Positions 26,831 to 62,420 of a stretch of 64,000 nt of DNA are shown in pieces. A program made the translations under genes and the position numbers. Position 1 is the stretch's first letter; the number at the start of each line of letters is the position of its first letter. This stretch comes from Macrostomum lignano (lineage: Eukaryota), in contig NIVC01001661.1 of assembly GCA_002269645.1 (NCBI GenBank), forward strand, positions 62,001 to 126,000, read 5' to 3'. A model generated the notes under the pieces. It ran no database searches. It saw only the letters and a list, made by a program, of their open reading frames with translations, and had not been told where the DNA came from.

Positions 26831-27091
<261 letters not shown>

Positions 27092-27102
27092 CTAAAAAGC
27101 AA

Positions 27103-27690: not shown

Positions 27691-27763
27691 ATTTTATTTA
27701 AATTTCAGATGTTTAATCATACACTAACACATCTAAATGCTAACTAGAATTACAGACACTCAC

Positions 27764-28081: not shown

Positions 28082-28565
28082 CTGGTGATGCAAATTAAAG
28101 CAATGGTTAGGGTTAGCTGGGGTCCGTCATGATAGCCTCTCGAGGCTTGTCGAGAAATTCACGAGGACCAACTACCTCAACTATATCAAGGATGTTTGCA
28201 TATATAAAACTATAAAATATATTCACAGGGGAGTTGCTGGCACCCTATCGCAAGGCAAATCTGCATGTAATCCGCAAATCCGGTTAAAGGGTAGCTTTGA
28301 CCTGTCCAAACCCTTGCACTCTTGACTTTACCCTTGACTTTTTCTTGCACTCTCAAGAGGCGACTGCAGAATCTTTTGTGATGGCGACTTTTCGATATTG
28401 CTGAGCATATATATACAACTATTTAGTAAACTATTTTTAGTATATGGATCTAGTAAACGGCTAGAGTAACTATGACTGTCGTGAGATACACAAATGCCTC
28501 GTCACCTAGTAGCGAGTTGCTATGTGGAAACTTTTACAACACATCTATTGCTTCAGAATGCTTAC

Positions 28566-28751
28566 TTTCTCCTGATTAGTAACGTTAACACCTTCAAACA
28601 CTTCGGAGTATTTGCCGCGGCCGAGTTTTCGAACCACCTGATAATCGTCCTGATTGCCCCATTCTACTACGTGAGCCTCGTAGTCCCAGTATTCGCGGCT
28701 GCGCAACGAATTCGCGTCAGGATAGGCGCGCGCTTTGCTTGGCAACGGCAT
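28566..28751 (-). CDS. CSNK2A1: CK2 alpha (casein kinase II catalytic subunit) first coding exon
   Basis: [10 protein letters not shown]...[34 protein letters not shown]...EK; 186 nt ending at a GTAAG donor. Confidence 0.96.
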
Positions 28752-36333: not shown

Positions 36334-36459
36334 GAGGCGCAGCTGCTGCGCAAGGCCTACGCGTGGACCAACTGGCCCGACTCATCAAAAACCGGGCGCG
36401 GATTAATTACTTAGTAGACCAATGGCCTACGTTAGAGGAATTAATCTCTAAAGAACAGA
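36334..36459 (-). pseudogene. U2: Degenerate U2 snRNA 3' half joined to ~18 nt of retrotransposon 3' terminus
   Basis: Matches the 45438-45589 copy but with deletions in stems III/IV; followed on + by gcgaagaaggccctgccc. Confidence 0.85.
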
Positions 36460-36495
36460 GCGAAGAAGGCCCTGCCCAGTTGATAGAATTAGTTT

Positions 36496-37478
36496 GATGC
36501 CAGCCCTGAGTCTGAGCCCCAGGTTGAGGGTTCAGGTGCTTCTCCCATTTTTTATTCCTTTGTATTTTAGCTTTGTGCTTTTATCCCCGGCCTCGAAGCC
36601 ATCCAATCTTTGGAGTAATGAGCTCTGCCCTCCCTGCCTGGTTCATCTTGCTTGCCTTGGTCCATCTGCTGGCTCCTCTGGTAGTCTCCCTGCTTATTGT
36701 GTCTTGGCTCTCATCACTGACTGTTGGATTGGAGTCCTGGGGAATAAGTTCGTCCCGAATCGCGGAATACCGGCTGAGTCCGGGTTCCTCTTGCCCCTGG
36801 TGCCCCTCTCCGACCCCTTGGCCTGGCCCTTATTGAGCTGGATAGCGAAAAAGCCTTGAGGCTCGCAGCACTGTAGGTAGACGGTCTTCCTGCTTGACAG
36901 GAGACTCGCCCTTGGCAATAAGCTTCTAGACTCGCTCCAATAGATAAGCCCTATTCCACAGACTTAGGATATTCCCTCTCTCGGACCGCTTACATTCTCC
37001 AATACTGTTTAAAGCTGGGTAGTGAAAAAGCCCTGTGGTTCGCAGCCCTATAGGAGGTCTTGCAATAATCTACTCTTGATAATCTACTCTTAATCTACTC
37101 TGCCTTAGTAAATAAGCTGCCCAGACTCTCCAATCTAAAGCACTACTTCCGTAGACTTTGTGGTTTCCCCACTCTCGGACCACGCTTTCTAAACTCCAAT
37201 CTTTTTGCGCGCACTCCCGGGTCTTGTCGTTGGGGGGTGGCTTGGGTGGACTCGGTCTTAGCACCGTCCCTGATTCCACCTTGGGTTGGCGGTGTCTTAG
37301 TCCATAGGCTTGAGCTAGTAGCCCCAATTAGGTATGTCCAGGCCTTTAGGCCCTGGTCCCAATCGTGGCCTCTCGGGCTATATGCCCCTGGCAGTATGGC
37401 CCACTGGTAGATCCCAGCGGCAGAGCCCTACTTGGGCTGATCCGCGGGGCCCCTGGCTTCCCACCCTCGATTAACAAC
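36496..37478. repeat. ~1-kb dispersed repeat, copy 1 (diverged partner at 38911-39870)
   Basis: Shared blocks such as ggttcctcttgc..gctggatagcgaaaaagccttgaggctcgcagc, with internal subrepeats. Confidence 0.85.
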
Positions 37479-37642
37479 AACAAAGACGGTATCTGACTGT
37501 TTTTACCTGTAGAGTATTCTGCCTCCCTCAAAAATCCGTAAAAAAGGTTAACATACTACTTATACATTTTTATTCAGTAGTAAGACAAGTAGCATGTATA
37601 AAATTAAGTACTGAATCACAAGTATATTCTAGTCAGCCAACC

Positions 37643-38660
37643 ACAAGAGAGTAAAGTCGAACATGTTATTTTTTGCAACCGACCAATCATGCGTGACATA
37701 CAATTGTCAAGTTAAACCCCATATGCGATTCATCATTGGTCACGTGCGACCTACATTTGTCAGTTCAAACCCCACCTACGATTCATCATTTGGCTTGCAC
37801 CCGGATGAACCAATCAAAGGCTACCAGGTACGATAACCAATCATGCGCTTTTACAGTAGACTAGTTGCGCAATTTTCTGTCCTGCCATGCTTGACAGCCA
37901 CCAAAATATGACCAGTTGACATTTACGAAAAAGGTGATGGACGACCTCGAGAGAGGTCCATTTGCCTATAAATACAAGTGGTCCGAAGCGGACCCAGAGC
38001 CAAGAAATCCTCCGGAAGGAGAAGAGCTCCGAAGAGGAAGCCTCAACAGGACTTCCTGAAGCCCAAGTCAAACGAGACTCGGCTGAATTCTTGCGGTAAG
38101 CCTTACTCATTTGCGCCTGTTGTTGAGACGTCTCATTTGAGTTTAGTTTGAGTCTGTTGAGACTCTTGGGTCTATTTAGACTCCATTGGTTGCAGTCTCC
38201 AGAAGGACTGCTCTGATAGATCTTAGAAGACTATCAGTGATTACCGGAGCATTACCTAGAGTGCATTAAGTCACTGCTAGAAGGAGAAGGCTTATTTGAT
38301 ACCGCAGTTTGGCGCAGGGATCCCATTGTTAATTGGAAGCTTCCTATCGGTCTACACGACAGATACCGGCTAACGAGAAATTCAGCAGCAACCGTTGTTC
38401 AGGAATCAACGCTAAGGATCCGGATCCAGATCGAAAAGACTGTAAGAGTCTAATCCAGAGAAACCAAGCTCAAGAAAGAGATCTACTCAAGGACGAGATT
38501 TACTGACCAGGAGTCAAGGTAATAAATACCTTCATTTGAATACTGGGTTGCCTAGCTAAGTGCTAGAAGTGATTGTTCCTTGATTACAGAGAAAGTCTGG
38601 TCATAAGGAACACATCATACCCCGGCTGCCTCTCTGGCGGCATTTCTCGGGTTGTGGACA
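37643..38660 (+). other. LTR-like / promoter-like segment
   Basis: Several ccaatca boxes, TATAAATA near 37966, GGTAAG near 38095, AATAAA at 38521, possible TG...CA ends; no TSD or PBS found. Confidence 0.3.
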
Positions 38661-38910
38661 ATCCAATTGGCCTATTGTTCAATAGCCCAATTAATCAGAG
38701 TCCTCACCGGAGGTGATGTACTCATCTAAAAATAACCCTTTCTTTCAAAATAGATTTTTCGGCCCTCGGCCTTGGTTTAGGGGGGGGGGGTGTACCTGGA
38801 GTGAGTTGGAATTCTGGACTACAGTATGGCTAGAACAGGACTTGAGCCCCCTGGTCGCATCCGCCCTGCAGGAAAGACGACCATTCACAAAAGTGTACGG
38901 TAGAGCCCAG

Positions 38911-39870
38911 TTATGCCAGCCCCGAGGCTGAGCCCCTGAGGTTGTGTGATCCTCCCCAGCTTTATCTCCCCATGTTTTAGCCCTTGGTTTTATCTTGTCA
39001 CTGGAGCCACCCAAAATTCGGAGTTGAAGGTCTCGCCTCGGTGAGCGCGCTCCACAGCCTCGGTCCACCTGCTGTCTCTTCTGGAAGTTCCCTGCCTTTG
39101 TGTCTTGGCTCTCATCTCTGACAGTGGACTAGAGTCCCGGGGAAGAGTTCGTCCGGCTGAGTCCGGGTTCCTCTTGCTCCTTGTGCCCCTCTCCAACCCC
39201 TTGGCCTGGCCTTTATACTGAGCTGGATAGCGAAAAAGCCTTGAGGCTCGCAGCCCTATAGGTAGTTTTGGTCACCTGCCTGATAGGAGACTCGCCCATC
39301 GCAATAATCTTCCCGACTCGCTCCAATAGATAAGCCTTTTCCGTAGACTAGGATATTTCCTCTCTCGGACCGCTTAAGCATTCTCCAATTGTTTAGAGCT
39401 GGTTAGTGAAAAAGCCTTGAGGCTCGCAGCCCCATAGGAGGAGCTTTGTGCAATTCGGCCTTCTGATAGGAGACTCGCCCTTGGTAAATAAGCTGCCCAG
39501 ATTCGCTCCAATCTAAAGCCTTTTCCGTAGACTTCGGGGTTTTCCCCACTCTCAGACCGCTTTTCCAAAATTTGGGAAAATTTTTGCGCGCACACTTGGG
39601 TTTTGTCGTTGGGGGGGGGGGATGGCTTGAGTGGACTCGGTCCTAGCACCGTCCCTGATTCCACTATGGGTTGGCGGTGTCTTAGTCCATAGGCTTGGGC
39701 TAGTAGCACCAATTAAGATGTTTTTCCAGGCCATGAGTCCTGGTCTCAACCTGGGCCGCTCGGGCTTTATGCCCCTGGTAGATAGGCCCCTGTAATCCAG
39801 CGGCAGAGCCCCTCCCCGGGCTGATTCGCGGGCAGCACACAGCACTGCTTCCTACCCTCGTTTCACAACA
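38911..39870. repeat. ~1-kb dispersed repeat, copy 2
   Basis: Colinear with 36496-37478; abuts the ORF end of the subfamily C element. Confidence 0.85.
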
Positions 39871-42690
39871 AGCTTGGAGACTGCGGGCGACCAGCCGAAG
39901 GCATAGGAAGGTCGGGTGCGTAAGAAAGTTTGCGGTGCACCCGTACAGTGCTCTCACCCACGTATTGCGGCTCCAGTGGATGCAATGGAGCGCAAGCTGA
40001 CGCTGAAGGCTGCGGATGACGCTCTCGGCGAGCCCGACAGCACGCAGGATAGTGTTGTTGTGCGGTGACAAAGAGCCAAGCGCACGACACACACCCTCCA
40101 AGAAGGGACTCCCACTGACATGAGCAACCAGTCAGAGCCCCGGGGGCCCCTGGACTCAGGCCTTAAATGGGAACGACCAATGGTCCGCACAAGCACAGAC
40201 CTTCCGAAGATACGCCGCCCGCCCAGCCAGACAACCTCGTTCGTGTCCTGCGCCTCCGCGGCCAGCGGGGAAGACAAGGACATCACAAGACACAGACGCG
40301 GCAAATGTAAGGGCCGTAGGTGTGTCTGCGGCAAGCGTAATTCTCGAGATGGCGCGGTATTTTCGCGAGTAGGTAGCCGGGCCGGTCTCCGTGTTTTGAC
40401 TTCGATCAGCATGTGCCGTCTTCGGGCCGGGTCATCCATGCTGATTTTGGGACGTAGGCCAGAGCCAGCAGCACATCTTGGTCGCTGAGCAACGTCGCAG
40501 TCGCGCACGCCTTTTGAATGGCGCCCGCGATCGCGCTGACGACGCCGACGTGGTGATCCCTCCGTGGTGCACACGACAGGCGCCAAGGACGTGGCCGAGA
40601 GTCTCCGACTCCGTGCCGCATCGCCTGCAGCGGGCGTCGGCTGTCGGGTCAGCAAGCCGCCGCATCGCATTTTTCGGAATGAGGTTGAGGCGGGTTCGTT
40701 GTACAAAGCGCCAATCACATACGCGCATCCCGGTGCTATTGAACAGCCAAGTGTGTCGGTCGATGTGCATCACCGTCGTCGCGAAGCAGCCCTTGGAGCG
40801 GCATTGGCGCCATGCGGCCGTGTGCGCCGATCGGACAACCTCGTGCAGCTTGCACGTAGCCGCGCTGATCCGGTGGAGCTGCTCGACCGCCCCAGACAGC
40901 GGGTGCCGCCACTCCAAACGCAGAGTCCAGTTTTGTTCGATGGGGAGCTTCAGGTCGAGCGGCTGCAGGACCTCTCGGACAGCGTGGCGCACTTGAAACC
41001 ACCAGATGGATGTCTCACCGCTTGGTGGTAGCGTCGCGCCATTCAGGAAGTCGGTGACGTCACGGTAGCTCGGTCGAGGCAATGTCGCGCAGTATCTCGT
41101 CGCTGCCTTCTGGATGGCGGCTTCCTCTTTGAGCAGCGGCAGCCCAAGGCCACCATGGAGCTTGTCGGCGTAAAGGTAGTCGACCGTCGACTCCGCTGAC
41201 AGGTAGGCGACGCGCCGGATGATCTGGCGTGCCCTCTCGTCATAGCCCTACTCCACGCGCTGTCGGCCTTGCAACTTGCGTCGCTGGTTGCCCAGCAGCG
41301 TCCAGTCGGCGTCGCGTAGCCTGAGATGAAAAGGCAGGCGGGAGACCACAAAGGTGCGGTAAGCGTTCAGCTTTTGCCATTGCAGGAGGTCACAGTTCGC
41401 CACCGCTGTGAGCTCTCGGAGCGCCCGCTCGAGTAAGGCGCCAACAGACGCAGAACGTCGTTCACCTGCCGGGACGCCCAGGTACTCGTAAGTCTCGTCC
41501 TCGGTAAGGTTCCGGATGGGGCCCGCAGCGACCTGTAGATCCGCCTCCTCGGCCGGGCCGCCGTTGATGGTAACGCGGCCGCACTTGCCCGGGTTGATGG
41601 TGAGGCCTGCCCAGTCTGCTGCCTTGTCAACCGCCGCGACCACGCGCCGAAGAGCGGCCCCGCTGCTCGTGACGAACGCCGCGTCATCAGCGTACGCAAG
41701 GCTGAGCTGATGGTGTCCATGCAGTAGGTAGCCGTCGACAGGATCCGGCGCACGAAGGAGGGGCTCCATGCATAACGCGAAAAGGACTCCCGAGAGGGGG
41801 CAGCCCTGGCGCACTCCGCTTTCAACCGGAATATCGGGGGTGACGCGGTCTTCGCCGGCATGTATAGCGGTCACGTTCTCCGCGGAAATGTCCCAAAAGA
41901 GCGCTAAGGTGTCTCCGTCCATTTCCGCCCGCTCCAGGGATCCAAATAGCAGGTCGTGAGGCACACTGGTGAAGGCGTCACGGAGGTCTAGGAAGGCAGC
42001 GTCCAGCGTCACCTTGCGGCGTCATGCGTCGTCGCGGCAGGCGCGCAGCACGTAGTTGTGGTCGGCGAAACCTTCATAGTGGAGGCCTCCGCGCTGCCTC
42101 GGGCTGATGAGCTCCGCCAAAGTCGCCCATTGTAGAACACGCTCGATTAGAACCGCCGCAAAGATTTTATTGATGGTGTCCAGCAGAGTTATTGGGCGCC
42201 ATTTGGATAGGTCAGATTCCTGCCCGGCCTCATACCTGTCCGGCTTTTTGAATAGTAACACCGTGCGGTACCGTTTTCAGGTTGACATCTGCTGGAGTAA
42301 TTGGCTCCGCCGTAAAGGTGTCGCGGCAAGCAGGAGCGGGCCGGTGGGCGGTCGGGCAGTCTTGTAGCCCACGATCTGCATAGCGTTGTCGAAAGTCGGT
42401 GTCGATGTCCGCAATGGGCACAGCGCATTCAATGCGCAATGTTCCGCATCGCGCGCTTTCGATTTTTTTGCGTAGCGAGCCGCCAGACTGGTATTGGGAG
42501 AACCACACCGTCCGTGAGGCCCTCCACAACCGCGGCGCTCATCCGGGACAGCGGTGGCAACGAGGGAGTCGCAGGCCGTGCAAAACTCAGGCCATGCTCG
42601 CTCGTCGTCCTCAGGCAGGTCGTTGAGGGCAGCGCAGCAGAGTTCGGCTGGCGTCAAGCCGGCTGCCGACGACTCATCAAAGCCGACGAC
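39871..42690 (-). mobile_element. Utopia-like RLE non-LTR retrotransposon, diverged subfamily C, frameshifted and 5'-truncated
   Basis: Fragmented ORFs with WRPITLLD, DLRDAF, GVRQGCPLSG, YADD, CRRCG..ETLGHV and IEVK motifs. Confidence 0.9.
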
Positions 42691-42699
42691 GAACCAAAT

Positions 42700-43006
42700 C
42701 TTGTAGCTCCGTCCAGGCAATGTCGCGCAAGATCTCATCGCTGCCTCCAAGACGCTTTAGCGCCTCGACAACCTTCTGAATGGCGGCTTCTTCTTTAAGC
42801 AGGGGCAGTCCGAGACCACTGTGACGCTTGTCGGCGTAAAGGTAGTCAATCGTCGACTCTGCTGGCAGGTGGCAGGTGGGCCCTCTCATCAAAGCCCAGC
42901 TCCGCACGCTGCCGTTCTTGCAACTTGCACCGCTGATTGCCCAGTAGCGTTCAATCGGCGTCGCGTAGTCTGAGATGGAAGGGCAGGCAGGAGACAACAA
43001 GTTAAA
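42700..43006 (-). mobile_element. Internal Utopia-like fragment (post-RT region)
   Basis: STIDYLYADKRHSGLGLPLLKEEAAIQKV..., fused to a subfamily A 3' UTR. Confidence 0.8.
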
Positions 43007-45322
43007 CAAAATGCAGAGTGGAAGATAAGTAAAAGAGGTAAAAGTAAAGGTAACAGGGTGGGCTGAGATGAGCAGAGTTTGGCAGAGTTCGGCACAAAAT
43101 CAGTGGATTTGAGGTGCGCCGGTGCAGTGCTCCACCCACGTGTTGCGGCTCCAGTGGATGCAGTGCAGCGCCAGTCGTCGCTGGAGGTGCCGGATGTCGC
43201 GCTCGCGCAGGCCTGCAGCGCGCAGGATGGCGTTGTTGAAGGGCGACCAGGCGCCCAGCGAGCCGATGCAGAAAGTGGCCAGGGCCGTTGGTGCCTCTGC
43301 GCTGAGCTGCTGCGTGATGCCGGCGTACTTCTGGCATACGGCTCGGTGCTTGCGTGGGAACGTGGCCGGCCCGACCTCGAACGGCGACTTGACTTCGATC
43401 AGGAGGCGGCGGCCTCTGTCTGGATCCATGATGCTGATGTCAGGTCGCAGTTCAGAGCCGGGAAGGACCTCCTGGTCGGTGGTGATGGTCGCGTTTGGAC
43501 GGGCCTCGCTGATGGCGGTGGCGACGGCGTTGACGATGCCGTCGTGGCGGTCTCTCTACCTGGCCGCGTGCACCGGGCAGCTGTTGATGACGTGGCCGAG
43601 CGTCTCGAAGCCGGCTCCGCAGCGGCGGCATCGCGGGTCGGATGTCGGGTCGGCCAGTCTCCGGAGTGCGTTGGTGGGCACCAGGTTGAGCCGCGCTCGG
43701 TGGATGAAGCGCCAGTCGCAGGCGCGCATGCCGGTGCTGCTGAACAGCCAGGTGTGGCTGCCGATGTGCGTGGCAGTCGTGGCGAATCGGCCTTGGGAGT
43801 GGCACCCGCGCCAGGCCGCCGTGTGCGCTGCCCTGACCGCCTGGTGAAGCCTCCGGGTGATTGCTGCCGCTCTGTCGCATCGCTGGATAGTTCCGGACAG
43901 CGGGTCGCGCCACTCCAGGCTGGCCGTCCAGTCGTTGCTGATGGTGAAGCGCAGCCCGGTCGCGTGGAGCACTTCGCGGGTGGCGTGGCGGACTTGGAAC
44001 CACCAGCTGGCCGTTTCTCCGCTGGGTGGCAGTGCTGCGCCATTGAGGAAGTCGGCGACGTCGCGAGGTCAAACAGGTGCAGCCCGGAGCCGTAGGCGGC
44101 GTTGGACCAGGCCGCGCAGTTCGGCCCAGGCTAGCTCTCTGAGCGCGGTTTCGGTGACCTTCTGGACGGCTGCCTCCTCCTTCGCTAGGGACAGGCCAAG
44201 GCCGCGGTGGCATCTGTCGGCGTAGAGGTAGTCTGTCGACGACCGCGTCGGAAGGTAGACGATGCGGTGGAGGATTTGACGTGCGCGCTCGTCGTAGCCC
44301 AGCTCCGCTCTCTGATGGCCTTGCAGTTTGCGCCTTGGGTTGCCGAGCTTCGTCCAGTCGGCGTCGCGCAGGCGGAGGTGGAATGGCAGGCGCGACGCAA
44401 TGAAGGTGTTGTAGGCGTCGAGCTTCTGCCACGGTAGCAGGTCGCTGTTCGCCACGGCCGTCAGGTCGTTGAGCGCGCGTTCCAGCAGCGCCGCCACAGA
44501 TGCAGAGCGGCGTTTGCCAGCCGGCACGCCCAGGTACTCGTAGAATTCGTCCTCTGCGAGCGCCCGGATCGCGCCTGCCTGTACGCGCAGCTGGAAGTCC
44601 TCCCCGTGCCCGCCGTTGATGGTGGGGCGGCCACACTTGTCGGGGTTGATCTCTAGGCCGGCCCAGGCTGCAGCGCGGTCGATCGCTGTCACCCTGCGCT
44701 GCAGGGCCTCGCCGCCGTTGGTTAGGAGCGCAGCGTCGTCCGCGTAGGCAAGGCTGAGTTGCCTGTGCCCAGGAGGTTGTAGCCGTCGGCCTGGTTTGGC
44801 GCACGCAGTAGCGGCTCCATGCAGAGGGCGAACAGCACTCCGGACAGCGGGCAACCTTGCCGAACACCGCTCTCAACGGGGATGTCGGCAGTCGCCTGAT
44901 CAGGGCCGGTGTACACCGCAGTAACGTTGTCGGCGTAGATGTCTTGGATGAGGGCCTGTGTGACTGCGTCTAGGCTGCCTCGCTCGAGCTGGCCGAACAT
45001 GAGGTCATGCAGGACGCTTGTGAAGGCGTCGCGGAGGTCCACGAAGGCGGCGTCGAGGACGGCTTTGCGGCGGCGCGCGTCGTCGCGGCAAGCTCTCAGA
45101 ACATAATTGTGGTCGGCGCAGCCTTCGTACTGGAGTCCGCCACGTTGTTCTGGGCTGATCAGGTCGGCGTCGGACGCCCACCGCGTGACCCGCTCCGCCA
45201 GGATGGCTGCCAGGATCTTGTAGCACGTGTCCAGCAGGGTGATGGGCCGCCATTTGGACAGGTCGGATTCTTGGCCGGCGATGTACCGGTCCGGCTTCTT
45301 GAACAGCAGGATGGTGCGGTAT
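43007..45322 (-). mobile_element. Utopia-like subfamily A copy, truncated at both ends
   Basis: RT through RLE (LRPDI..IEVK) with frameshifts; near-identical to the corresponding part of 45590-49840. Confidence 0.92.
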
Positions 45323-45437
45323 TCTAAGGTATTCTACCTTCTTCCTACCACCCAAAGGACCACTGTACATAGCTATGTACATGTACACTACTACTTGATA
45401 CTACTATGGCTCCGCCTTCAATATTTTAGATATCTTA

Positions 45438-45589
45438 GATGCGCAGATCCTTGCTGTACTGCAGCGCAAGGCCTACGCGTGGACCAGGTCGTGTGAACAC
45501 GAAGCACTGGTCCGACTCATCAAAAACCGGATTAATTACTTAGTAGACCAATGGCCTACGTTAGAGGAATTAATCTCTAAAGAACAGAT
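45438..45589 (-). ncRNA. U2: U2 snRNA 3' half (target site downstream of the element), with 110-nt 3' flank at 45328-45437
   Basis: Begins ATCTGTTCTT; folds as stems IIa, IIb, III and IV, with loop IV GCTGCAGTACA. Confidence 0.9.
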
Positions 45590-46001
45590 CGAAAGGCCCT
45601 GCCCGTCGGCCGAGTATCCGACGGTCGGGCAATATATTTAAGCATTTAAACGATGCGATATAAGCGGAAATATTTGGCCAAGAGCCGATGATGCTACTGA
45701 AAGTAGCTAAAAACGGGTTCGCAGGATGCGTAAAACAGTAAAACATTGGAGTAAATGCAATTAAAACAGTGGGAAAAAGTGAAGGCGCAGGAGACGGGAT
45801 GGCGGCGGGGATAAGCGCGAGAGGCGGAATCGCAGCGAAAAATGCTTACAGAGTGCGTGTACTACGAGATAGTAAAAAGTAAAATATTAAAGAAAAACAA
45901 AGTAAAACAAAAATGCAGAGTGGAAGATAAATAAAAGAGGTAAAAGTAAAGGTAACAGGGTGGGCTGAGATGAGCAGAGTTTGGCAGAGTTCGGCACAAA
46001 A

Positions 46002-49000: not shown

Positions 49001-49733
49001 GCTGCTGCCGCCGGTGCTGCTGCTGTCGCCGTTGCCGCTGCCGCCGGTGCTGCTGCCGCCGGTGCTGCTGCTGTCGCCGCTGCCGCTGCCGCCGGTGCTG
49101 CTGCTGTCTCCACCACTGATGCTACTGGAGCCGCGGGAACTGCTGGTGCCGCCGACGTTACCACCGGAGCTGCTGGCGCCGCTACGGCTGCCGGTGCCGC
49201 TGGTTCGACTGCTGGTGCCGTGGCGCCCCGTCTCGTGGCGCAGAGGGCCGCGTGGCGTGCCCACCTAGCAGTGGAGAAAATCGTGTGGCAGTGCCGGCAT
49301 GCGACTGCGTTCTCCAGCTTGGCGTCAGTCCTTGGTCTGCACCTGGCGGCGTGGATGTTGCGGGCGCGTGCTGTGGCGAATTGTGCGCCGCATCTGTACG
49401 TGCACCGATGCCGCGCGTCCGTTGCTGCTTTTGCCTTGGCCGCAGCCTCGTAGTTACCGGCCGCGCGTTGCCTCTCTGCGCAGGTGTTTAAGTGCCGAGA
49501 CATGCCTTTGGCTGTCAGTGTCTTACGGCAGGCCGGGCAAACCTCCCTCGGCAGCGCTGCTCCAGACTGTCGTCTGCTGCTGGTAGCCGCTGCCTCAGTC
49601 GCTTGATTCGACGCTGTTGGGGTCGATCGAGGCTGCTGCCGCTGGGCGAGGTAGCCGAGTTCTTGCAGATGCCGGCATGGGCGTAAAGGTTGCGCTCGGA
49701 CCTAAATTGACGGCCGCACTTGCATGTGTACAT
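46002..49733 (-). CDS. Retrotransposon polyprotein (~1240 aa once three apparent 1-nt deletions are repaired): 4 CCHC fingers, Ala-rich linker, RT, CCHC knuckle, restriction-like endonuclease
   Basis: Motifs PGNDG, WRPITLLD, DLRDAFTSVPH, GVRQGCPLSG, LAYADD, YEYLG, CRRCG-ETLGHVINSC, RHD..RPDI..IEVK. Frame breaks near 49620 (inferred site), 47580 and 47340. Confidence 0.85.
48770..49220 (-). repeat. Coding gct/gcc-rich repeat giving a PAAAA-type Ala-rich linker
   Basis: Tandem gctgctgccgccggt-like units within the element ORF. Confidence 0.9.
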
Positions 49734-49840
49734 ATTCCGCCACTATAGTCGAGCAGTGGATCCAAAGGCCGAGACGGCGATGTTACTGTGAAGTGGAGCA
49801 CCCGAGGCGAAGCATGACGAGCCGAACCGAGCCGAGCCGA

Positions 49841-49865
49841 ACTACAGATCTTAGCCAATAAGGCC
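49841..49865 (-). ncRNA. U2: U2 5' fragment (nt 11-39 with AAAG deleted) at the 5' junction of the full-length element
   Basis: Minus strand GGCCTTATTGGCTAAGATC-TGTAGT versus the intact 5' half at 56476-56514. Confidence 0.85.
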
Positions 49866-50320
49866 TCTCGGACGGCGTGGCGCACTTGAAACCACTAGCT
49901 GGATGTCCCGCCGCTTGATGGTAGCGTCGCGCCATTCAGGAAGTCGGCGACGTCACGGTGTCGCACGGGGGCGGCGATTGTTAAAGCAATTTGAAGCAAA
50001 AAAGAAGGCGGGAGCGCATTTCAAAAAGATTTTAGAGGAAAAAGAATATCTGGGGATAAAAACGAGAGAGTAGAAGTAAGATAAGAGCGAAAACGAAAGG
50101 ATAGAATAGAAAAGTGAGTCGAAATGATTAAAAAGGTAAAGGAGGATGAAATAAATGATAAATAGATACATAAAATGTAAAATGTATAAGATGTAGACGG
50201 GTGAAAACAGGAGCAAAAGTCAAAGGGGAAGCAAATGGCAACGAGAGAGAAGGGCGCGTGGATACCGCGGGCGACCAGGCGAAGGCACAGGGAGGTCGGC
50301 CGCGTCAGTTTTGCATCTGA
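49866..50320 (-). mobile_element. Fused Utopia-like fragments (subfamily C-like ORF piece plus B/C-like 3' UTR)
   Basis: 49866-49958 resembles ~40970-41065; 49960-50310 resembles 52930-53250 and 39880-39920. Confidence 0.75.
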
Positions 50321-50434
50321 CGTCGGTATTCTACGTTCTTCCTACCACCCAAAGGACCACCGTACATAGCTATATACATGTACAGTACTCCTTGATACTG
50401 CCATGACTCCGCCTTCGCTATTTTAGATTTCTTA

Positions 50435-50585
50435 GATGCGCAGATCCTTGCTGTACTGCAGCGCAAGGCCTACGCGTGGACCAGGTCGTGTGAACACGAA
50501 GCACTGGTCCGACTCATCAAAAACAGGATTAATTACTTAGTAGACCAATGGCCTACGTTAGAGGAATTAATCTCTAAAGAACAGA
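50435..50585 (-). ncRNA. U2: U2 snRNA 3' half with 110-nt 3' flank (50325-50434)
   Basis: Same sequence as 45438-45589 apart from a substitution next to the Sm site and the missing junction A. Confidence 0.9.
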
Positions 50586-52158
50586 GCGAAAGGCCCTGCC
50601 CGTCGGCCGAGTATCCGACGGTCGGGCAATATATTTAAGTATTAAACACAATAAGCGATATAAGCAGAAATATTTGGCCAAGAGCCTGATGATGCTACTG
50701 AGAGTAGCTAAAAACGGGTTCGCAGGATGCGTAAAACAGTAAAACAATGAAATGCAATTAAAACAGTGGGGAAAAGTGATGGCGCAGGAGATGGGATGGC
50801 GGCAGGGATGAGCGCGAGAGGCGGAATCGCAGCGAAAATAGCTTACAGAGTGCGTGTACTACGAGATAGTAAAAAGTAAAATATTACAGAAAAACAAAGT
50901 AAAACAAAAATGCAGAGTGAAAGATGAATAAAACAGGTAAAGTCGTAAAGGTAACAGAGCGGACTGAGATGAGCAGAGTTTGGCAGAGTTCGGCACAAAA
51001 TCAGTGGATTTGAGGTGCGCCGGTGCAGTGCTCCACCCACGTGTTGCGGCTCCAGTGGATGCAGTGCAGCGCTAGTCGTCGTTGGAGGTGCCGGATGTCG
51101 CGCTCGCGCAGGCCTGCAGCGCGCAGGATGGCGTTGTTGAAGGGCGACCAGGCGCCCAGCGAGCCGATGCAGAAAGTCGCCAGGGCCGTTGGCGCCTCTG
51201 CGCTGAGCTGCTGCGTGATGCCGGCGTACTTCTGGCATACGGCTCGGTGCTTGCGTGGGAACGTGGCCGGCCCGACCTCGAACGGCGACTTGACTTCGAT
51301 CAGGAGACGGCGGCCTCTGTCTGGATCCATGATGCTGATGTCAGGTCGCAGATCAGAGCCGGGAAGGACCTCCTGGTCGGTGGTGATGGTCGCGTTTGGG
51401 CGGGCCTCGCTGATGGCGGTGGCGACGGCGTTGACGATGCCGTCGTGGCGGTCCCTCCACCTGGCCGCGTGCACCGGGCAGCTGTTGATCACGTGGCCGA
51501 GCGTCTCGACGCCGGCTCCGCAGCGGCGGCATCGCGGGTCGGATGTCGGGTCGGCCAGTCTCCGGAGCGCGTTGGTGGGCACCAGGTTGAGCCGCGCTCG
51601 GTGGATGAAGCGCCAGTCGTGGCGAATCGGCCTTGGGAGTGGCACCCGCGCCAGGCCGCCGTGTGCGCTGCCCTGACCACCTGGTGAAGCCTCCGGGTGA
51701 TTGCTGCCGCTCTGTCACAGCGCTGGATAGTTCTGGACAGCGGGTCGCGCCACTCCAGGCTGGCCGTCCAGTCGTTGCTGATGGTGAAGCGCAGCCCGGT
51801 CGCGTGGAGCACCTCGCGGGTGGCGTGGCGGACTTGGAACCACCAGCTGGCCGTTTCTCCGCTGGGTGGCAGTGCTGCGCCATTGAGGAAGTCGGCGACG
51901 TCGCGAGGTCAAACAGGTGCAGCCCGGAGCCGTAGGCGGCGTTGGACCAGGCCGCGCAGTTCGGCCCAGGCTAGCTCTCTGAGCGCGGCGTCGGTGCAGC
52001 AGAGTCGCCTGATGGCCTCGGTGACCTTCTGGACGGCTGCCTCCTCCTTCGCTAGGGACAGGCCAAGGCCGCCGTGGCATCTGTCGGCGTAGAGGTAGTC
52101 TGTCGAGGACTGCGTCGGAAGGTAGACGATGCGGCGGAGGATTTGACGTGCGCGCTCG
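50586..52158 (-). mobile_element. Utopia-like subfamily A, 5'-truncated, with a ~61-bp internal deletion near 51618
   Basis: Complete 3' UTR and RLE; the deletion is bounded by repeated cagtcg. Confidence 0.92.
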
Positions 52159-52614
52159 AAGTAGCTAAAAACGGGTTCGCAGGATGCGTAAAACAGTAAA
52201 ACATTGGAGTAAATGCAATTAAAACAGTGAGAAAAAGTGAAGGCGCAGGAGACGGGATGGCGGCGGGGATGAGCGCGAGAGGCGGAATCACAGCGAAAAA
52301 TGCTTACAGAGTGCATGAACTTCGAGACAGTAAAAAAGTAAAATATTAAAGAAAAACAAAGTAAAACAAAAATGCAGAGTGGAAGATAAATAAAACAGGT
52401 AAAAGTAAAGGTAACAGGGTGGGCCAGAGTTTGGCAAATGACAAATGCTCATGGCAAATGAGCAGAGTTTGGCAGAGTTCGGCACAAAATCAGTGGATTT
52501 GAGGTGCGCCGGTGCAGTGCTCCACCCACGTGTTGCGGCTCCAGTGGATGCAGTGCAGCGCCAGTCGTCGTTGGAGGTGCCGGATGTCGCGCTCGCGCAG
52601 GCCTGCAGCGCGCA
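52159..52614 (-). mobile_element. Short subfamily A fragment (ORF end plus partial 3' UTR)
   Basis: Matches ~45680-46110; carries a small extra insertion near 52430-52460. Confidence 0.85.
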
Positions 52615-52661
52615 CTCCTTGATACTGCCATGACTCCGCCTTCGCTATTTTAGATTTCTTA

Positions 52662-52812
52662 GATGCGCAGATCCTTGCTGTACTGCAGCGCAAGGCCTAC
52701 GCGTGGATCAGGTCGTGTGAACACGAAGCACTGGTCCGACTCATCAAAAACCGGATTAATTACTTAGTAGACCAATGGCCTACGTTAGAGGAATTAATCT
52801 CTAAAGAACAGA
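52662..52812 (-). ncRNA. U2: U2 snRNA 3' half with 48-nt flank
   Basis: Matches the other copies; one mismatch in stem III. Confidence 0.9.
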
Positions 52813-54140
52813 GCGAAAGGCCCTGCCCCTCGGACGAGCTACCGAGAGTGGGGGCAATATATTTAAGTATTAAAGGAAATTAGTAGGCGAGGACAGATGA
52901 TTGTAAAGGCGACGGCGAGCGAGGGCTCATGCAAAAGAAATAGAGCGGCGAAAGTTAAAGCAAATTGAGCAGAATAAAGCGTTTCAAAAGACTTTTAGAA
53001 GACAACGGGAAGCGGGATAAAAAGGGGAGTGGCAGTAAAAGCAGACGAAAACAAAAGGATGAAATAAAAAAGAAATAAAATAAAATAGACCAAAATGGAT
53101 AAAAAAAGGATGGGTGAGAGAGTATTAAATGCAAAATAGATAAATGAGATATAAAGGTGGTGAAAACAGGCGCGGACGTCCCAAAAGGAGCAACGGGCAA
53201 TAATTGGGGTCAGAAAGCGCGGAGACCCAAAACGGTCAGGCGAAGGCACAGGCACAGGTGCATCAGAAAGTTTGCGGGGCGCCCGTGCAGTGCTCCACCC
53301 ACGAATTGCGGCTCCAGTGGATGCAGTGGAGCGCAAGCTGGCGCTGGAGGCTGCGAATGACGCGCTCGGCGAGCCCGGCCGCACGCAGGATGGTGTTGTT
53401 GTGCGGCGACCAGGAGCCAAGCGCTCCGACACAAAGAGTCGCCAGGGCCGTAGGTGCGTCCTCCTTCAGCCGCTGGGTCAGGCCAGCGTATTTCTCGCAG
53501 ACGGCCCGGTGCTTACGCGAATAGGTAGTCGGGCCGGCCTCCATCGGTGTCTTGACTTCGATCAGCAGGCGCCGTCCTCGAGCCGGGTCCTCGACGCTGA
53601 TGTCGGGACGGAGGCCAGAACCAGGCAGCACCTCCTGATCGTTGAGCACCGTCGCAGTCGGACAGGCCTTCTGGATGGCACCGGCGATCGCGCTGACGAC
53701 GCCGTCGTGGCGGTCTCTCCATCGTCCCGCATGCACAGGGCAGGCGCTAAGGACATGACCGAGGGTCTCCGCCTCAGCGCCGCATCGCCTGCAGCGGGCG
53801 TCGGCTGTCGGGTCAGCGAGCCGCCGCGTCGCATTCGTTGGAATGAGGTTGAGGCGGGCGCGATGTACGAAGCGCCAGTCACACACGCGCATCCCGGTGC
53901 TGTTGAACAGCCAGGTGTGCCCGCCGATGTGTGTCGCCGTCGTCGCGAAGCGGCCCTGGGAGCGGCATTGCCGCCACGCCGATGTGTGCGCCGATCTGAC
54001 GACCTCGTGCAGCTTGCGCGTGGCCGCGCTGATCCGTTGGAGCTGCTCGACCGCCCCAGACAGCGGGTGCCGCCACTCCAGACGCACAGTCCAGTCCTGC
54101 TCAATGCGGAACTTCAGGTCGAGCGGTTGCAGCACTTCTC
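52813..54140 (-). mobile_element. Utopia-like subfamily B, 5'-truncated
   Basis: Distinct 3' UTR; ORF CRRCGAEAETLGHVLSAC..LRPDISVEDP..IEVKTP..HCTGAPQTF*; same U2 junction as subfamily A. Confidence 0.92.
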
Positions 54141-54160
54141 GAGCGGTCGAGCGGTTGCAG

Positions 54161-55249
54161 CGCCACTCCAGGCTGGCCGTCCAGTCGTTGCTGATGGTGA
54201 AGCGCAGCCCGGTCGCGTGGAGCACCTCGCGGGTGGCGTGGCGGACTTGGAACCACCAGCTGGCCGTTTCTCCGCTGGGTGGCAGTGCTGCGCCATTGAG
54301 GAAGTCGGCGACGTCGCGAGGTCAAACAGGTGCAGCCCGGAGCCGTAGGCGGCGTTGGACCAGGCCGCGCAGTTCGGCCCAGGCTAGCTCTCTGAGCGCG
54401 GCGTCGGTGCAGCAGAGTCGCCTGATGGCCTCGGTGACCTTCTGGACGGCTGCCTCCTCCTTCGCTAGGGACAGGCCAAGGCCGCCGTGGCATCTGTCGG
54501 CGTAGAGGTAGTCTGTCGAGGACTGCGTCGGAAGGTAGACGATGCGGCGGAGGATTTGACGTGCGCGCTCGAAGTAGCTAAAAACGGGTTCGCAGGATGC
54601 GTAAAACAGTAAAACATTGGAGTAAGCAATTAAAACAGTGAGAAAAAGTGAAGGCGCAGGAGACGGGATGGCGGCGGGGATGAGCGCGAGAGGCGGAATC
54701 ACAGCGAAAAATGCTTACAGAGTGCATGAACTTCGAGACAGTAAAAAAGTAAAATATTAAAGAAAAACAAAGTAAAACAAAAATGCAGAGTGGAAGATAA
54801 ATAAAACAGGTAAAAGTAAAGGTAACAGGGTGGGCCAGAGTTTGGCAAATGACAAATGCTCATGGCAAATGAGCAGAGTTTGGCAGAGTTCGGCACAAAA
54901 TCAGTGGATTTGAGGTGCGCCGGTGCAGTGCTCCACCCACGTGTTGCGGCTCCAGTGGATGCAGTGCAGCGCCAGTCGTCGTTGGAGGTGCCGGATGTCG
55001 CGCTCGCGCAGGCCTGCAGCGCGCACTCCTTGATACTGCCATGACTCCGCCTTCGCTATTTTAGATTTCTTAGATGCGCAGATCCTTGCTGTACTGCAGC
55101 GCAAGGCCTACGCGTGGATCAGGTCGTGTGAACACGAAGCACTGGTCCGACTCATCAAAAACCGGATTAATTACTTAGTAGACCAATGGCCTACGTTAGA
55201 GGAATTAATCTCTAAAGAACAGAGCGAAAGGCCCTGCCCCTCGGACGAG
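54161..55249. repeat. Near-identical duplicate of 51748-52838
   Basis: Same chimeric junctions and same private insertion; offset 2413 bp, then 2411 bp after a 2-nt indel. Confidence 0.92.
55073..55223 (-). ncRNA. U2: U2 snRNA 3' half (inside the duplicated block)
   Basis: Matches 52662-52812. Confidence 0.9.
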
Positions 55250-56472
55250 TATCCGACGGTCGGGCAATATATTTAAGTATTTAAACGATGCGATATAAGC
55301 GGAAATATTTGGCCAAGAGCCGATGATGCTACTGAGAGTAGCTAAAAACAGGTTCGCAGGATGCGTAAAACAGTAAAACAATGAAATAAATGCAATTAAA
55401 ACAGTGGGAAAAAGTGAAGGCGCAGGAGACGGGATGGTGGCAGGGATGAGCGCGAGAGGCGGAATCGCAGCGAGAATAGCTAACAGAGTGCATGAACTTC
55501 GAGACAGTAAAAAGTAAAATATTAAAGAAAAACAAAGTAAAACAAAAATGCAGAGTGAAAGATGAATAAAACAGGTAAAAGTAAAGGTAACAGGGTGGGC
55601 TGAGATGAGCAGAGTTTGGCAGAGTTCGGCACTAAATCAGTGGATTTGAGGTGCGCCGGTGCAGTGCTCCACCCACGTGTTGCGGCTCCAGTGGATGCAG
55701 TGCAGCGCCAGTCGTCGTTGGAGGTGCCGGATGTCGCGCTCGCGCAGGCCTGCAGCGCGCAGGATGGCGTTGTTGAAGGGCGACCAGGCACCCAGCGAGC
55801 CGATGCAGAAAGTCGCCAGGGCCGTTGGTGCCTCTGCGCTGAGCTGCTGCGTGATGCCGGCGTACTTCTGGCATACGGCTCGGTGCTTGCGTGGGAACGT
55901 GGCCGGCCCGACCTCGAACGGCGACTTGACTTCGATCAGGAGACGGCGGCCTCTGTCTGGATCCATGATGCTGATGTCAGGTCGCAGATCAGAGCCGGGA
56001 AGGACCTCCTGGTCGGTGGTGATGGTCGCGTTTGGGCGGGCCTCGCTGATGGCGGTGGCGACGGCGTTGACGATGCCGTCGTGGCGGTCCCTCCACCTGG
56101 CCGCGTGCACCGGGCAGCTGTTGATCACGTGGCCGAGCGTCTCGACGCCGGCTCCGCAGCGGCGGCATCGCGGGTCGGATGTCGGGTCGGCCAGTCTCCG
56201 GAGTGCGTTGGTGGGCACCAGGTTGAGCCGCGCTCGGTGGATGAAGCGCCAGTCGCAGGCGCGCATGCCGGTGCTGCTGAACAGCCAGGTGTGGCTGCCG
56301 ATGTGCGTGGCAGTCGTGGCGAATCGGCCCTGGGAGTGGCACCCGCGCCAGGCCGCCGTGTGCGCTGCCCTGACCACCTGGTGAAGCCTCCGGGTGATTG
56401 CTGCCGCTCTGTCACAGCGCTGGATAGTTCTGGACAGCGGGTCGCGCCACTCCAGGCTGGCCGTCCAGTCGT
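55224..56472 (-). mobile_element. Utopia-like subfamily A, 5'-truncated, directly joined to the U2 5' half
   Basis: 3' UTR plus knuckle/RLE ORF (55637-56377); three extra bases (ttg) separate it from U2 nt 39. Confidence 0.93.
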
Positions 56473-56475
56473 CAA

Positions 56476-56514
56476 ACTACACTTTGATCTTAGCCAATAA
56501 GGCCGAGAAGCGAT
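56476..56514 (-). ncRNA. U2: U2 snRNA 5' end (39 nt), with unique AT-rich upstream DNA
   Basis: ATCGCTTCTCGGCCTTATTGGCTAAGATCAAAGTGTAGT: the conserved metazoan U2 5' end including stem I and most of the GUAGUA branch-point recognition sequence. Confidence 0.96.
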
Positions 56515-61715: not shown

Positions 61716-62024
61716 TCATCAAATAACTAGTTCCCATCCAAACTATGCATCCAAGCATATAAAAAACCCAGGTATCAACCTAATATCATAATCATATATA
61801 ATATTAGAGACTAGGCCTAAAGTAAAAGGCAAGTTTATATATATAACTTTTTCAAATGCATCAGCCAAATAATTATACTTAAAGGCCTAGGCAAAATCTA
61901 TCAATTTGATTAAATAAATTAACTTAATCTTAGGTTCACTTTAAAAGTCTTAAGCCTAATAATAATTGGTTTTAATATAATATAAAGCTTCATCAACTCA
62001 GAATTCTCTCCATGAAATAGATAT

Positions 62025-62420
62025 TCATCAATATTTTTTTGTGAAACCTAAATCCATCAAAATCCTCTCCGTAAAACTGATACTCACCAAAATTCACTCC
62101 GTGAAACTGATATTCATTAAAATCCTTTCTGTGAAACTTAAATCCATCAAAATCCTCTCCGTGAAACTGATATTCATCAAAATTCATTCTGTGAAACAGA
62201 TATTCATCAAAATCCTCTCTGTGAAACTTAAATCCATCAAAATCCTTTCTGTAAAGTTTAAATCCATCAAAATCCTCTTCGTGAAATATAAATCCATCAA
62301 AATCCTCTCTATGAAACTTAAATCTATCAAAATTCTCTCTGTGAAACTTAAATCCATCAAATCCTCTCTATGAAACTTAAATATATCAAAATCCTTTCCA
62401 TGAAATGCAATATTTATCAA
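62025..62420. repeat. 30-bp minisatellite
   Basis: Unit gtgaaacttaaatccatcaaaatcctctcc. Confidence 0.92.

What the first reader, a model, noticed from the sequence alone, without database searches (positions are those of the whole stretch)
36334..56514. ~20-kb array of U2-targeting retrotransposons with five U2 3' halves and no intact U2 gene
Seen: all elements lie on the minus strand, and every intact element 3' end joins U2 at (A)TCTGTTCTT, just after the branch-point recognition sequence. There are five U2 3' halves (36334, 45438, 50435, 52662, 55073) but only one complete 5' half (56476) and one partial one (49841). Known: RT+RLE elements that target this U2 site are the Utopia family. 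Inference: this is not an array of singly interrupted U2 genes, because the internal units have no U2 promoter region or complete 5' half. It looks like one U2 locus that grew by repeated additions.
Basis: partly seen in the sequence, partly recalled or inferred. Interest (0 to 1): 0.85.

Follow-up and report, generated by a model that had tools for sequence, protein, structure and literature searches.

The report
Dead U2 gene cluster filled by Utopia retrotransposons
A 20-kb stretch of an animal genome is a decayed cluster of U2 snRNA genes that was invaded many times by Utopia-type site-specific retrotransposons. It is a clear new example, in a new host, of a pattern already described in oomycetes and wasps.

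Summary
Window 36343-56514, minus strand, holds four near-identical U2 3' halves, one variant 3' half, one U2 5' half with upstream DNA, and one partial 5' half. Between them lie at least 12 same-strand pieces of RT plus restriction-like-endonuclease (RLE) elements. Every intact element 3' end abuts U2 at TCTGTTCTT.

The elements belong to the Utopia lineage. They have zinc fingers, RT, a CCHC motif and an RLE. Their closest proteins (31-37% identity) include Nasonia and Ladona proteins, and four relatives sit at the same U2 nucleotide. There are at least three lineages (A, B, and C, which has no RT homology). Every copy is truncated or broken.

The A copies differ mainly at third codon positions, so they are independent retrotranspositions. 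The U2 3' halves are 99-100% identical while their shared downstream flank is only 84-90% identical. The targets were therefore distinct paralogous U2 genes, not one gene that grew. The 5' halves and promoters were lost at or after insertion. One 1.1-kb segmental duplication is also present.

Kojima and Jurka (2015) described the same pattern in Phytophthora and Nasonia. This is a new member of a known kind, of modest interest.

The parts
56476..56514 (-). U2 snRNA nt 1-39. This is the only complete 5' half. AT-rich upstream DNA starts at 56515.
55225..56475 (-). Family A copy 'Ua' (A nt 3004-4251), 5'-truncated, with 3 extra nt (TTG) at its 5' junction. The ORF remnant is open. The last 61 nt are B2-type, because they lie inside the duplicated tract.
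55069..55223 (-). U2 3' half (nt 41-195), unit Ua.
55025..55068 (-). U2 downstream flank FL nt 1-44.
54572..55025 (-). A' fragment (A nt 3715-4140), truncated at both ends. It is 99.4% identical to A2 over 157 nt.
54150..54578 (-). A'' piece (A nt 2614-3032). It is the end of the 1140-bp duplicated tract (54150-55285 matches 51739-52874 at 98.9%).
52814..54149 (-). Family B copy B2, equivalent to A nt about 2958-4251. It is 5'-truncated with an intact 3' end, and is joined in frame to the A'' piece with a 30-aa overlap.
52658..52812 (-). U2 3' half, unit Ub.
52614..52657 (-). Flank FL nt 1-44.
52159..52614 (-). A' fragment (A nt 3715-4140), the second copy.
50587..52165 (-). A'' copy 'Uc' (A nt 2614-4251). 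It has a stop codon, a 58-nt deletion and a frameshift.
50431..50585 (-). U2 3' half, unit Uc.
50325..50430 (-). Flank FL nt 1-106.
49977..50324 (-). B-type piece covering the last codons plus the 3' UTR. It lacks roughly the last 150 nt.
49867..49976 (-). B-type ORF fragment (equivalent to A nt 2855-2966), 92% identical to B1.
49841..49866 (-). Partial U2 5' half (nt 11-39, with a 4-nt deletion).
45589..49840 (-). Full-length family A element, 4252 nt. It has a 107-nt 5' UTR and one ORF of about 1245 aa (four zinc-finger-like C/H motifs, an Ala-rich repeat, RT, CCHC, RLE), broken by at least 3 frameshifts. The 3' UTR is 416 nt and ends in a hairpin followed by the tail GGGCAGGGCCTTTCG.
45434..45588 (-). 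U2 3' half, unit Ud.
45322..45433 (-). Flank FL nt 1-106 plus a 10-nt repeat whose last 4 nt (TACC) overlap the start of A2. It is a divergent flank variant.
42999..45321 (-). A2 (A nt 1589-3945), truncated at both ends. It has its own frameshift and two stop codons.
42690..42998 (-). B' fragment (equivalent to A aa 803-896), 78% identical to B1.
39872..42689 (-). B1, a family B copy covering A aa about 310-1240 in one frame. It is 51% identical to A in the tblastn alignment, has 6 stop codons, and is cut about 60 nt after its ORF.
36460..39871 (-). Region C, 3.4 kb with no RT homology. It contains two 0.82-kb direct repeats (80% identical) and ends in the family 3' tail GGGCAGGGCCTTCTTCGC. 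It may be a non-autonomous or foreign insert.
36343..36459 (-). Variant U2 3' half (nt 41 to about 170, with indels) and an unrelated downstream flank.

Best explanation
This is a dead cluster of paralogous U2 snRNA genes, colonised repeatedly by at least two coding lineages (A and B) of Utopia. Utopia is a group of NeSL-clade non-LTR retrotransposons that carry a restriction-like endonuclease.

Inferred from the family: each element's endonuclease nicks U2 between nt 39/40 and TCTGTTCTT. Reverse transcription is then primed from that nick on the element's 3' end (target-primed reverse transcription). This gives a precise 3' junction and a variable, usually truncated, 5' end.

Shown here:
- The A copies are separate retrotransposition events from slightly different active sources.
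- The U2 3' halves come from distinct U2 genes that share a homologous downstream flank.
- One 1.1-kb segment was later duplicated or converted at the DNA level.
- Every copy is now defective, and no functional U2 gene remains in the window.

Inferred: the missing U2 5' halves, promoters and spacers were removed at the 5' junction of successive insertions, or soon afterwards. The cause was either upstream target deletion or template switching by the reverse transcriptase. This left stacks of 3'-truncated pieces upstream of each element that still abuts U2.
For: Identity:
- The ORF has zinc fingers, RVT_1 (E 2e-22), a CCHC motif and RPD...E.K, and no AP endonuclease.
- The best solved-structure matches are R2 proteins (7e-47), against 1e-12 for L1.
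- The closest proteins are 31-37% identical over about 95% of the query. They include Nasonia and Ladona proteins, both listed as Utopia hosts in PMC4640811.
- Four relatives sit at the same U2 nucleotide.
- The published Utopia 3' junctions read ...|TCTGTTCTTATCAG.
- In a neighbour-joining tree, A+B1 group together (100%) with U2-adjacent P0001 (83%), inside the U2-associated clade (72%) and apart from a 28S-inserted R2-like element.

Independent insertions:
- Mismatches by codon position are 13/9/36, 1/2/13 and 0/0/8 (P 7e-6 to 2e-4).
- The 3' UTR differs by 5-6% while the ORF differs by 1-2%.
- The 5' truncation points all differ.
- The inactivating lesions are private to each copy.

Separate U2 targets:
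- Between units Ud and Uc, the U2 part has 1 mismatch in 155 nt and the flank has 11 in 106 (P 3e-4).
- Between Ua and Uc, U2 plus flank has 2 mismatches in 199 nt and the adjacent A 3' UTR has 24 in 414 (P 0.005).
- Ua is a classic interrupted gene with its promoter side present. Ud keeps U2 nt 11-39.

Precedent:
- Phytophthora arrays lack the U2 5' fragment, and Nasonia has Utopia-Utopia junctions.
- A sea-spider locus has two tandem [element - U2 3' half] units and no 5' half.
Against: - No spacer or promoter remnant survives between units, so the ancestral tandem arrangement is inferred and not seen.
- The flank ends at exactly the same nucleotide (FL nt 106) in two units, yet is followed by different element pieces. 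Random deletions would not predict this.
- Gene conversion from intact U2 genes elsewhere could keep the U2 3' halves identical without separate functional ancestors.
- The window cannot separate upstream deletion from template switching.
- No Repbase references for NeSL, YURE or R5 were available, so placement inside Utopia rests on proxies.
- The assembly could not be checked against reads.
Confidence: 0.65

Rival explanations
1. A single U2 gene grew by RT-mediated additions. Element RNAs co-transcribed from the U2 promoter read through the U2 3' half into the flank. During target-primed reverse transcription, the RT jumped from one template onto the 3' end of such read-through RNAs. This copied promoter-less [element - U2 3' half - flank] units into the same locus.
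For: - The flank stops at the same nucleotide (nt 106) in two units, each with a TAC(C) microhomology junction, as if it were a fixed RNA 3' end.
- All pieces are co-oriented, and only the piece next to U2 keeps its 3' end.
- Internal units have no promoter.
- Template jumping is an established property of the related R2 reverse transcriptase (my own knowledge, not tested here).
Against: - The flank is far more diverged than the U2 part copied with it (P about 1e-4 to 3e-4).
- U2 plus flank is more alike between Ua and Uc than the element 3' UTRs attached to them. Neither result is expected if element, U2 half and flank were copied together from one locus.
- The third flank boundary is at nt 44, not 106.
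- No terminator or poly(A) signal is evident at nt 106.
Confidence: 0.12
2. One interrupted U2 gene was amplified purely at the DNA level, by unequal crossing-over or segmental duplication, and then decayed.
For: A 1140-bp tract (51739-52874 matching 54150-55285) is 98.9% identical and shares a premature stop codon, so DNA-level duplication or conversion did occur here.
Against: - The other A copies differ mainly at third codon positions and in the UTR. They therefore diverged as functional elements, not as neutral duplicates.
- The 5' breakpoints differ between units.
- Several distinct lineages are interleaved: B is 51% identical to A at the protein level in the tblastn alignment, and B' is 78% identical to B1.
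Confidence: 0.08
3. The array is an assembly artefact in which reads from several dispersed Utopia-interrupted U2 loci were stitched together.
For: - Repeats of 96-99% identity and 1-4 kb length are hard to assemble.
- Many junctions between pieces are non-homologous.
Against: - Every junction is unique, and units differ by 1-6%. That divergence is enough for long reads to resolve.
- Both outer flanks are unique AT-rich DNA.
- Similar arrays exist in independent assemblies of a sea spider and a barnacle and in the published Phytophthora data.
Confidence: 0.07

Closest known systems
Utopia (U2-targeting NeSL-clade non-LTR retrotransposons; Kojima & Jurka 2015, PMC4640811), especially the Phytophthora U2/Utopia arrays
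   Same: - The domain plan is the same: N-terminal zinc fingers, RT, CCHC, RLE.
- The U2 3' junction is the same (TCTGTTCT...).
- Several families share one array.
- Disrupted U2 genes lack the first 38-40 nt, and there is no 5' fragment upstream of most elements.
   Different: - There is no RNase H domain, which is specific to the oomycete families.
- The host is an animal with AT-rich DNA. Its CK2 alpha is closest to a flatworm's, and Platyhelminthes is not among the published Utopia host phyla.
- The proteins are at most 37% identical to anything in the databases searched.
- No intact U2 genes are interspersed in this window.
Utopia-1_NVit of Nasonia (tandem Utopia insertions in U2 genes)
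   Same: - Target specificity for U2 is strict.
- Element-element junctions occur inside U2 loci.
- Disrupted U2 genes outnumber intact ones.
- A Nasonia protein (P0014) is among the closest relatives, and its locus starts with a U2 5' half ending GTGTAGTA|.
   Different: - Here the upstream pieces at element-element junctions lack their 3' ends. These are not simple head-to-tail re-insertions.
- Protein identity is only about 35%.
R2 in 28S rDNA arrays
   Same: - It is an RLE-type, site-specific element that uses target-primed reverse transcription.
- It has precise 3' junctions and variable 5' junctions, with truncations and upstream target deletions.
- It lives in a tandem multigene family.
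- R2 proteins are the best structural-database match.
   Different: - The target is different (U2, not 28S).
- No Myb domain was detected.
- Identity to a 28S-inserted R2-like element is only 21%.
- No HDV-like ribozyme was found at the 5' end.
Keno (AP-endonuclease LINE that targets the same U2 site)
   Same: It has the same 3' flanking U2 sequence, according to PMC4640811.
   Different: Keno encodes an AP endonuclease. The elements here have a C-terminal CCHC plus PD-(D/E)xK endonuclease and no AP-endonuclease domain.

Membership tests
Utopia | One ORF with an RT domain followed by a CCHC zinc finger and a PD-(D/E)xK restriction-like endonuclease, and no AP endonuclease. | tested here: met
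   - RVT_1 scores E 2e-22.
- The ORF contains CRRCGAGVETLGHVINSC followed by RPDISI...IEVK.
- C747, C750, H759, C764, R808 and D810 are nearly invariant (90% or more) among 14 relatives.
- R2 proteins are the top match among solved structures.
Utopia | One to three N-terminal zinc fingers. | tested here: met
   Four zinc-finger-like C/H motifs are read in the full-length copy between 49733 and about 49230. One of them lies upstream of a frameshift.
Utopia | The 3' end is joined to U2 snRNA at ...|TCTGTTCT (U2 nt 39-41). | tested here: met
   Five of five intact 3' ends have this junction. The published junctions read the same (S1 Fig of PMC4640811).
Utopia | The RT groups with Utopia families inside the NeSL clade. 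| tested here: inconclusive
   - A and B1 group with U2-adjacent relatives, including Nasonia, barnacle and sea-spider proteins. Support is 72% against a 28S-inserted R2-like element, and 89% for RLE elements against AP-endonuclease LINEs.
- No named Repbase sequences for Utopia, NeSL, YURE or R5 were available to include.
Utopia (arthropod type) | No target-site duplication. | tested here: met
   - The full-length copy reads U2...TGTAGT|element|ATCTGTTC, so nothing is duplicated and nothing is lost.
- Ua reads GTGTAGT + TTG + element ...CGC|TCTG, with at most 1 nt lost.
Utopia (oomycete type) | An RNase H domain upstream of the RT. | tested here: not met
   Pfam finds only RVT_1 in the 704-aa N-terminal ORF.
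Keno | An AP-like endonuclease at the N-terminus. | tested here: not met
   There is no PF03372 hit, and the endonuclease is a C-terminal RLE.
R2 | Insertion in 28S rDNA, and a Myb DNA-binding motif. | tested here: not met
   - The target here is U2.
- No rRNA is present in the window.
- No Myb domain was reported by Pfam.
NeSL-1 | A spliced-leader gene as target, and an Ulp1-like protease domain. | tested here: not met
   The target is U2, and Pfam reports no protease domain.

The most novel reading that the evidence does not exclude
Utopia itself manufactures promoter-less U2 3' halves. In this reading, read-through co-transcripts (element, then U2 3' half, then about 106 nt of flank) serve as acceptor templates for RT template jumps. 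A single U2 locus can then expand into an array, and the stacked, 3'-truncated pieces and the shared flank end point are signatures of multi-template cDNAs.
Probability: 0.1. Interest if true: 0.6.

Novelty: new member of a known kind. Interest (0 to 1): 0.3.

Why it matters
- It adds Utopia lineages that are deeply diverged (at most 37% identity to anything in the databases searched). The host is an animal outside the published host list and may be a flatworm.
- It gives an unusually readable record of how a site-specific retrotransposon can consume a small multigene family. Several lineages coexist in one cluster, every insertion is independent, and no working U2 gene is left at the locus.
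- This bears on the open question raised by Kojima and Jurka: how do several Utopia lineages persist on a low-copy target?
- The junction catalogue is raw material for deciding whether 5'-junction damage comes from target deletion or from template switching. It includes the shared flank end point, the stacked 3'-truncated pieces, and a breakpoint cluster at A nt 2958-3032.
- It does not reveal a new kind of element or mechanism.

Tried and rejected
- Self-cleaving ribozyme at the 5' junction. I looked for an HDV-like ribozyme, as in R2. Rfam with a permissive threshold on 49300-50000 gave nothing relevant.
- RNA structure at the breakpoint cluster (A nt about 2958-3032). Fold z-scores were -0.24 for A and -1.58 for B1, so there is no support.
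- Host identification:
  - No gene with exactly the product of the 704-aa window ORF is on record.
  - The metagenome scan returned no relative above 34% identity, and no same-species U2 locus.
  - CK2 alpha exons point only to a metazoan, closest to Macrostomum at 85%.
- U2 in the flanks of two more full-length metagenome relatives (L006, L007). None was found within the short contigs, so this is uninformative.
- Region C as an LTR element. The 0.82-kb direct repeats lack TG...CA ends and flanking duplications. It has no tRNA or other RNA family and no RT homology.
- Keno, R2 and NeSL-1 membership. All were rejected on the endonuclease type or the target (see the membership test).
- The element's last 26 nt align to U2 stem-loop I in the Rfam hits. 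I treated this as an alignment by-product. An alternative, larger 3' hairpin is predicted, and it shows one compensatory pair between A and B2.


Full report
**Observation**

An Rfam scan of the window finds U2 snRNA four times on the minus strand, at 45434, 50431, 52658 and 55069, with 78-86 bits. In each alignment only model positions about 39-192 are real U2. The first 26 nt of each hit is foreign sequence.

The U2 20-mer that begins TCTGTTCTT occurs five times on the minus strand against none expected. The fifth copy (36343-36459) is a variant with indels. It scores 32 bits over model positions 39-84 only.

A complete U2 5' half (nt 1-39), with AT-rich upstream DNA, lies at 56476-56514. 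A partial 5' half (nt 11-39, with a 4-nt deletion) lies at 49841-49866. There is no intact U2 gene in the 64 kb.

All protein-homologous pieces are on the minus strand. All five intact element 3' ends join U2 at ...CG(C/A)|TCTGTTCTT.

**What the elements are**

The one full-length copy (49840-45589, 4252 nt, called 'A') encodes a single ORF of about 1245 aa. Its parts, in order, are:
- four zinc-finger-like C/H motifs;
- a 0.5-kb Ala-rich repeat;
- an RT domain (Pfam RVT_1, E 2e-22);
- a CCHC finger;
- an RPD...E.K restriction-like endonuclease (RLE).

The ORF is broken by at least three frameshifts. It has no AP endonuclease. The best matches among solved structures are R2 proteins (E 7e-47), far ahead of L1 ORF2 (1e-12).

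In a search of 5.8 billion proteins, the only strong hits are 16 proteins at 30-38% identity (E 1e-144 to 3e-65). After these, scores drop to generic AP-endonuclease LINEs. The named hits come from a barnacle, a sea spider, the dragonfly Ladona fulva and the wasp Nasonia vitripennis. The last two are listed as Utopia hosts by Kojima and Jurka (2015, PMC4640811).

I fetched the loci of five relatives. Four of them abut U2 at the same nucleotide:
- L001 and the sea spider L004 read element|TCTGTTCTT.
- The barnacle L003 sits inside a 1.84-kb tandem U2 array.
- Nasonia L002 starts with ...GTGTAGTA|element.

The published Utopia 3' junctions read ...|TCTGTTCTTATCAG.

A neighbour-joining tree on 864 columns groups A with B1 (100%) and with the U2-adjacent P0001 (83%). 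These fall inside the U2-associated clade (72%), separate from an R2-like element flanked by 28S rRNA.

I therefore file the elements under Utopia. One caveat applies: named Repbase references for NeSL, YURE and R5 were not available.

**Anatomy of the array** (minus strand, 5' to 3')

1. U2 nt 1-39 | A 3004-4251 | U2 3' half | flank FL 1-44.
2. A' 3715-4140 | A'' 2614-3032 | B2 (about 2958-4251) | U2 3' half | FL 1-44.
3. A' 3715-4140 | A'' 2614-4251 | U2 3' half | FL 1-106.
4. B-type 3' UTR piece | B-type ORF fragment | U2 nt 11-39 | full-length A | U2 3' half | FL 1-106 plus a 10-nt repeat.
5. A2 1589-3945 | B' fragment | B1 (aa about 310-1240) | 3.4-kb region C | variant U2 3' half.

Family B is 51% identical to A at the protein level in the tblastn alignment. 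B1 and B2 are 84-87% identical in DNA, and B' is 78% identical to B1. Region C has no RT homology but ends in the same 3' tail (GGGCAGGGCCTT..CGC).

Every copy is truncated or carries stops or frameshifts.

A 1140-bp tract (51739-52874 and 54150-55285) is 98.9% identical, and both copies share a premature stop codon. This is a DNA-level duplication or conversion event.

**How the array arose: independent insertions**

Differences between A copies fall overwhelmingly at third codon positions. The counts are 13/9/36, 1/2/13 and 0/0/8, with P from 7e-6 to 2e-4. The 3' UTRs differ by 5-6% while the ORFs differ by 1-2%.

The copies therefore diverged while they were still coding. They come from separate retrotransposition events from related active sources, not from in-place duplication followed by neutral decay. 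Inactivating lesions are private to each copy.

**How the array arose: separate U2 targets**

Each internal U2 3' half is followed by a copy of the same downstream flank. Between unit Ud and the other units the flank is 84-90% identical, while the adjoining U2 part is 99-100% identical (1/155 against 11/106 mismatches, P 3e-4). Between Ua and Uc, U2 plus flank is more alike (2/199) than the element 3' UTRs attached to them (24/414, P 0.005).

This is what separate, once-constrained paralogous U2 genes hit by different element variants would show. It is not what one locus copying itself would show.

Unit Ua is a classic interrupted gene with its upstream side intact, and Ud keeps nt 11-39. The most economical reading is a former cluster of U2 genes in which promoters, 5' halves and spacers were lost at the 5' junction of insertions or soon afterwards.

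Kojima and Jurka inferred the same for Phytophthora: no U2 5' fragment upstream of Utopia, and disrupted genes that all lack the first 38 nt. They also reported Utopia-Utopia junctions in Nasonia. The sea-spider locus L004 shows two tandem [element - U2 3' half] units with no 5' half.

**What remains unexplained**

- The flank ends at exactly the same nucleotide (...GTAGAATACC, nt 106) in two units but is followed by different element pieces. Each junction has TAC(C) microhomology.
- In every interval only the piece touching U2 keeps its 3' end. The pieces stacked upstream of it are 3'-truncated.
- Four breakpoints cluster within A nt 2958-3032. No unusual RNA structure is predicted there.

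These features keep an RT-mediated alternative alive: template switching, possibly onto read-through co-transcripts. The divergence pattern argues against that alternative as the main source of the extra U2 halves. I give it about 0.1.

**Context**

The flanks are 30-34% GC, while the elements are 56-68% GC in 2-kb windows. Exons of casein kinase II alpha lie at 26453-28856 on the minus strand. Their best match is the flatworm Macrostomum at 85%. The host is therefore an animal, possibly a platyhelminth, a phylum not on the published Utopia host list. Its identity is not established.

**Verdict**

The finding is real, and the family assignment is correct. The 'single locus that grew' inference is only partly right, and the phenomenon is already in the literature. 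It is a new member of a known kind, with interest of about 0.3.

Noticed in passing
window 677-27674: More than 15 different micro- and minisatellite arrays lie almost back to back. Examples are (AGTT)x270 at 677-1757 and (GATA)x681 at 7665-10403; the other arrays have units of 7-34 bp, most of them 19-34 bp. Several arrays have extreme strand skew.
   Followed up: no
window 26453-28856, minus strand: Three exons of a casein kinase II alpha gene lie at 28856-28545, 28093-27740 and 26758-26453. A 21-bp minisatellite sits in one intron. The best database match is Macrostomum lignano at 85%, with no near-identical protein, so the host proteome is not in the database.
   Followed up: partly
L003 (Amphibalanus amphitrite JAHNUP010000053.1), 1-16974: This locus holds a 1.84-kb tandem U2 array. 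Five units carry the same insert of about 100 nt at the Utopia site (...GTAGTATCTG|insert|TCTGTTCTT). One U2 is intact (190 bits), and one unit carries the full-length element P0007. The short insert could be a miniature or non-autonomous Utopia derivative spread by array homogenisation.
   Followed up: partly
L004 (Pycnogonum litorale OZ207704.1), 5300-14775: Two tandem [Utopia-like element - U2 3' half] units lie 4.4 kb apart, sharing about 44 nt of flank. No U2 5' half is present. The locus also has an inverted U2 fragment and an inverted element fragment.
   Followed up: partly
window 36460-39871: This 3.4-kb non-coding block lies between B1 and the variant U2 half. It contains two 0.82-kb direct repeats (36654-37480 and 39057-39871, 80% identical) and ends in the Utopia-type 3' tail. 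It may be a non-autonomous element that uses the Utopia machinery.
   Followed up: partly
window 45589-45625, 52814-52850: The 3'-terminal hairpin upstream of the shared tail GGGCAGGGCCTTTCG differs between A (CCGTCGG/CCGACGG) and B2 (CTCTCGG/CCGAGGG) by one compensatory pair and one wobble change. It is probably the RT recognition element.
   Followed up: partly
window 48722-49225: The family A ORF contains an in-frame Ala-rich (GCN) repeat of about 0.5 kb, with 15/48-nt periodicity, between the zinc fingers and the RT. B1 is truncated just downstream of the equivalent position.
   Followed up: no
window 54100-54200, 49867-49880, 56465-56475, 51739: Four independent breakpoints fall within about 75 nt of element coordinates (A nt 2958-3032): the B2 5' end, the B-fragment 3' end, the Ua 5' end, and the end of the duplicated tract. 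No strong RNA structure is predicted there.
   Followed up: partly
L022 (metagenome contig Ga0099364_10057930): An R2-like RLE element is flanked on both sides by eukaryotic 28S rRNA. I used it as an outgroup.
   Followed up: no
window 61998-62450: A 30/60/90-bp minisatellite lies in the AT-rich DNA upstream of the U2 promoter side.
   Followed up: no
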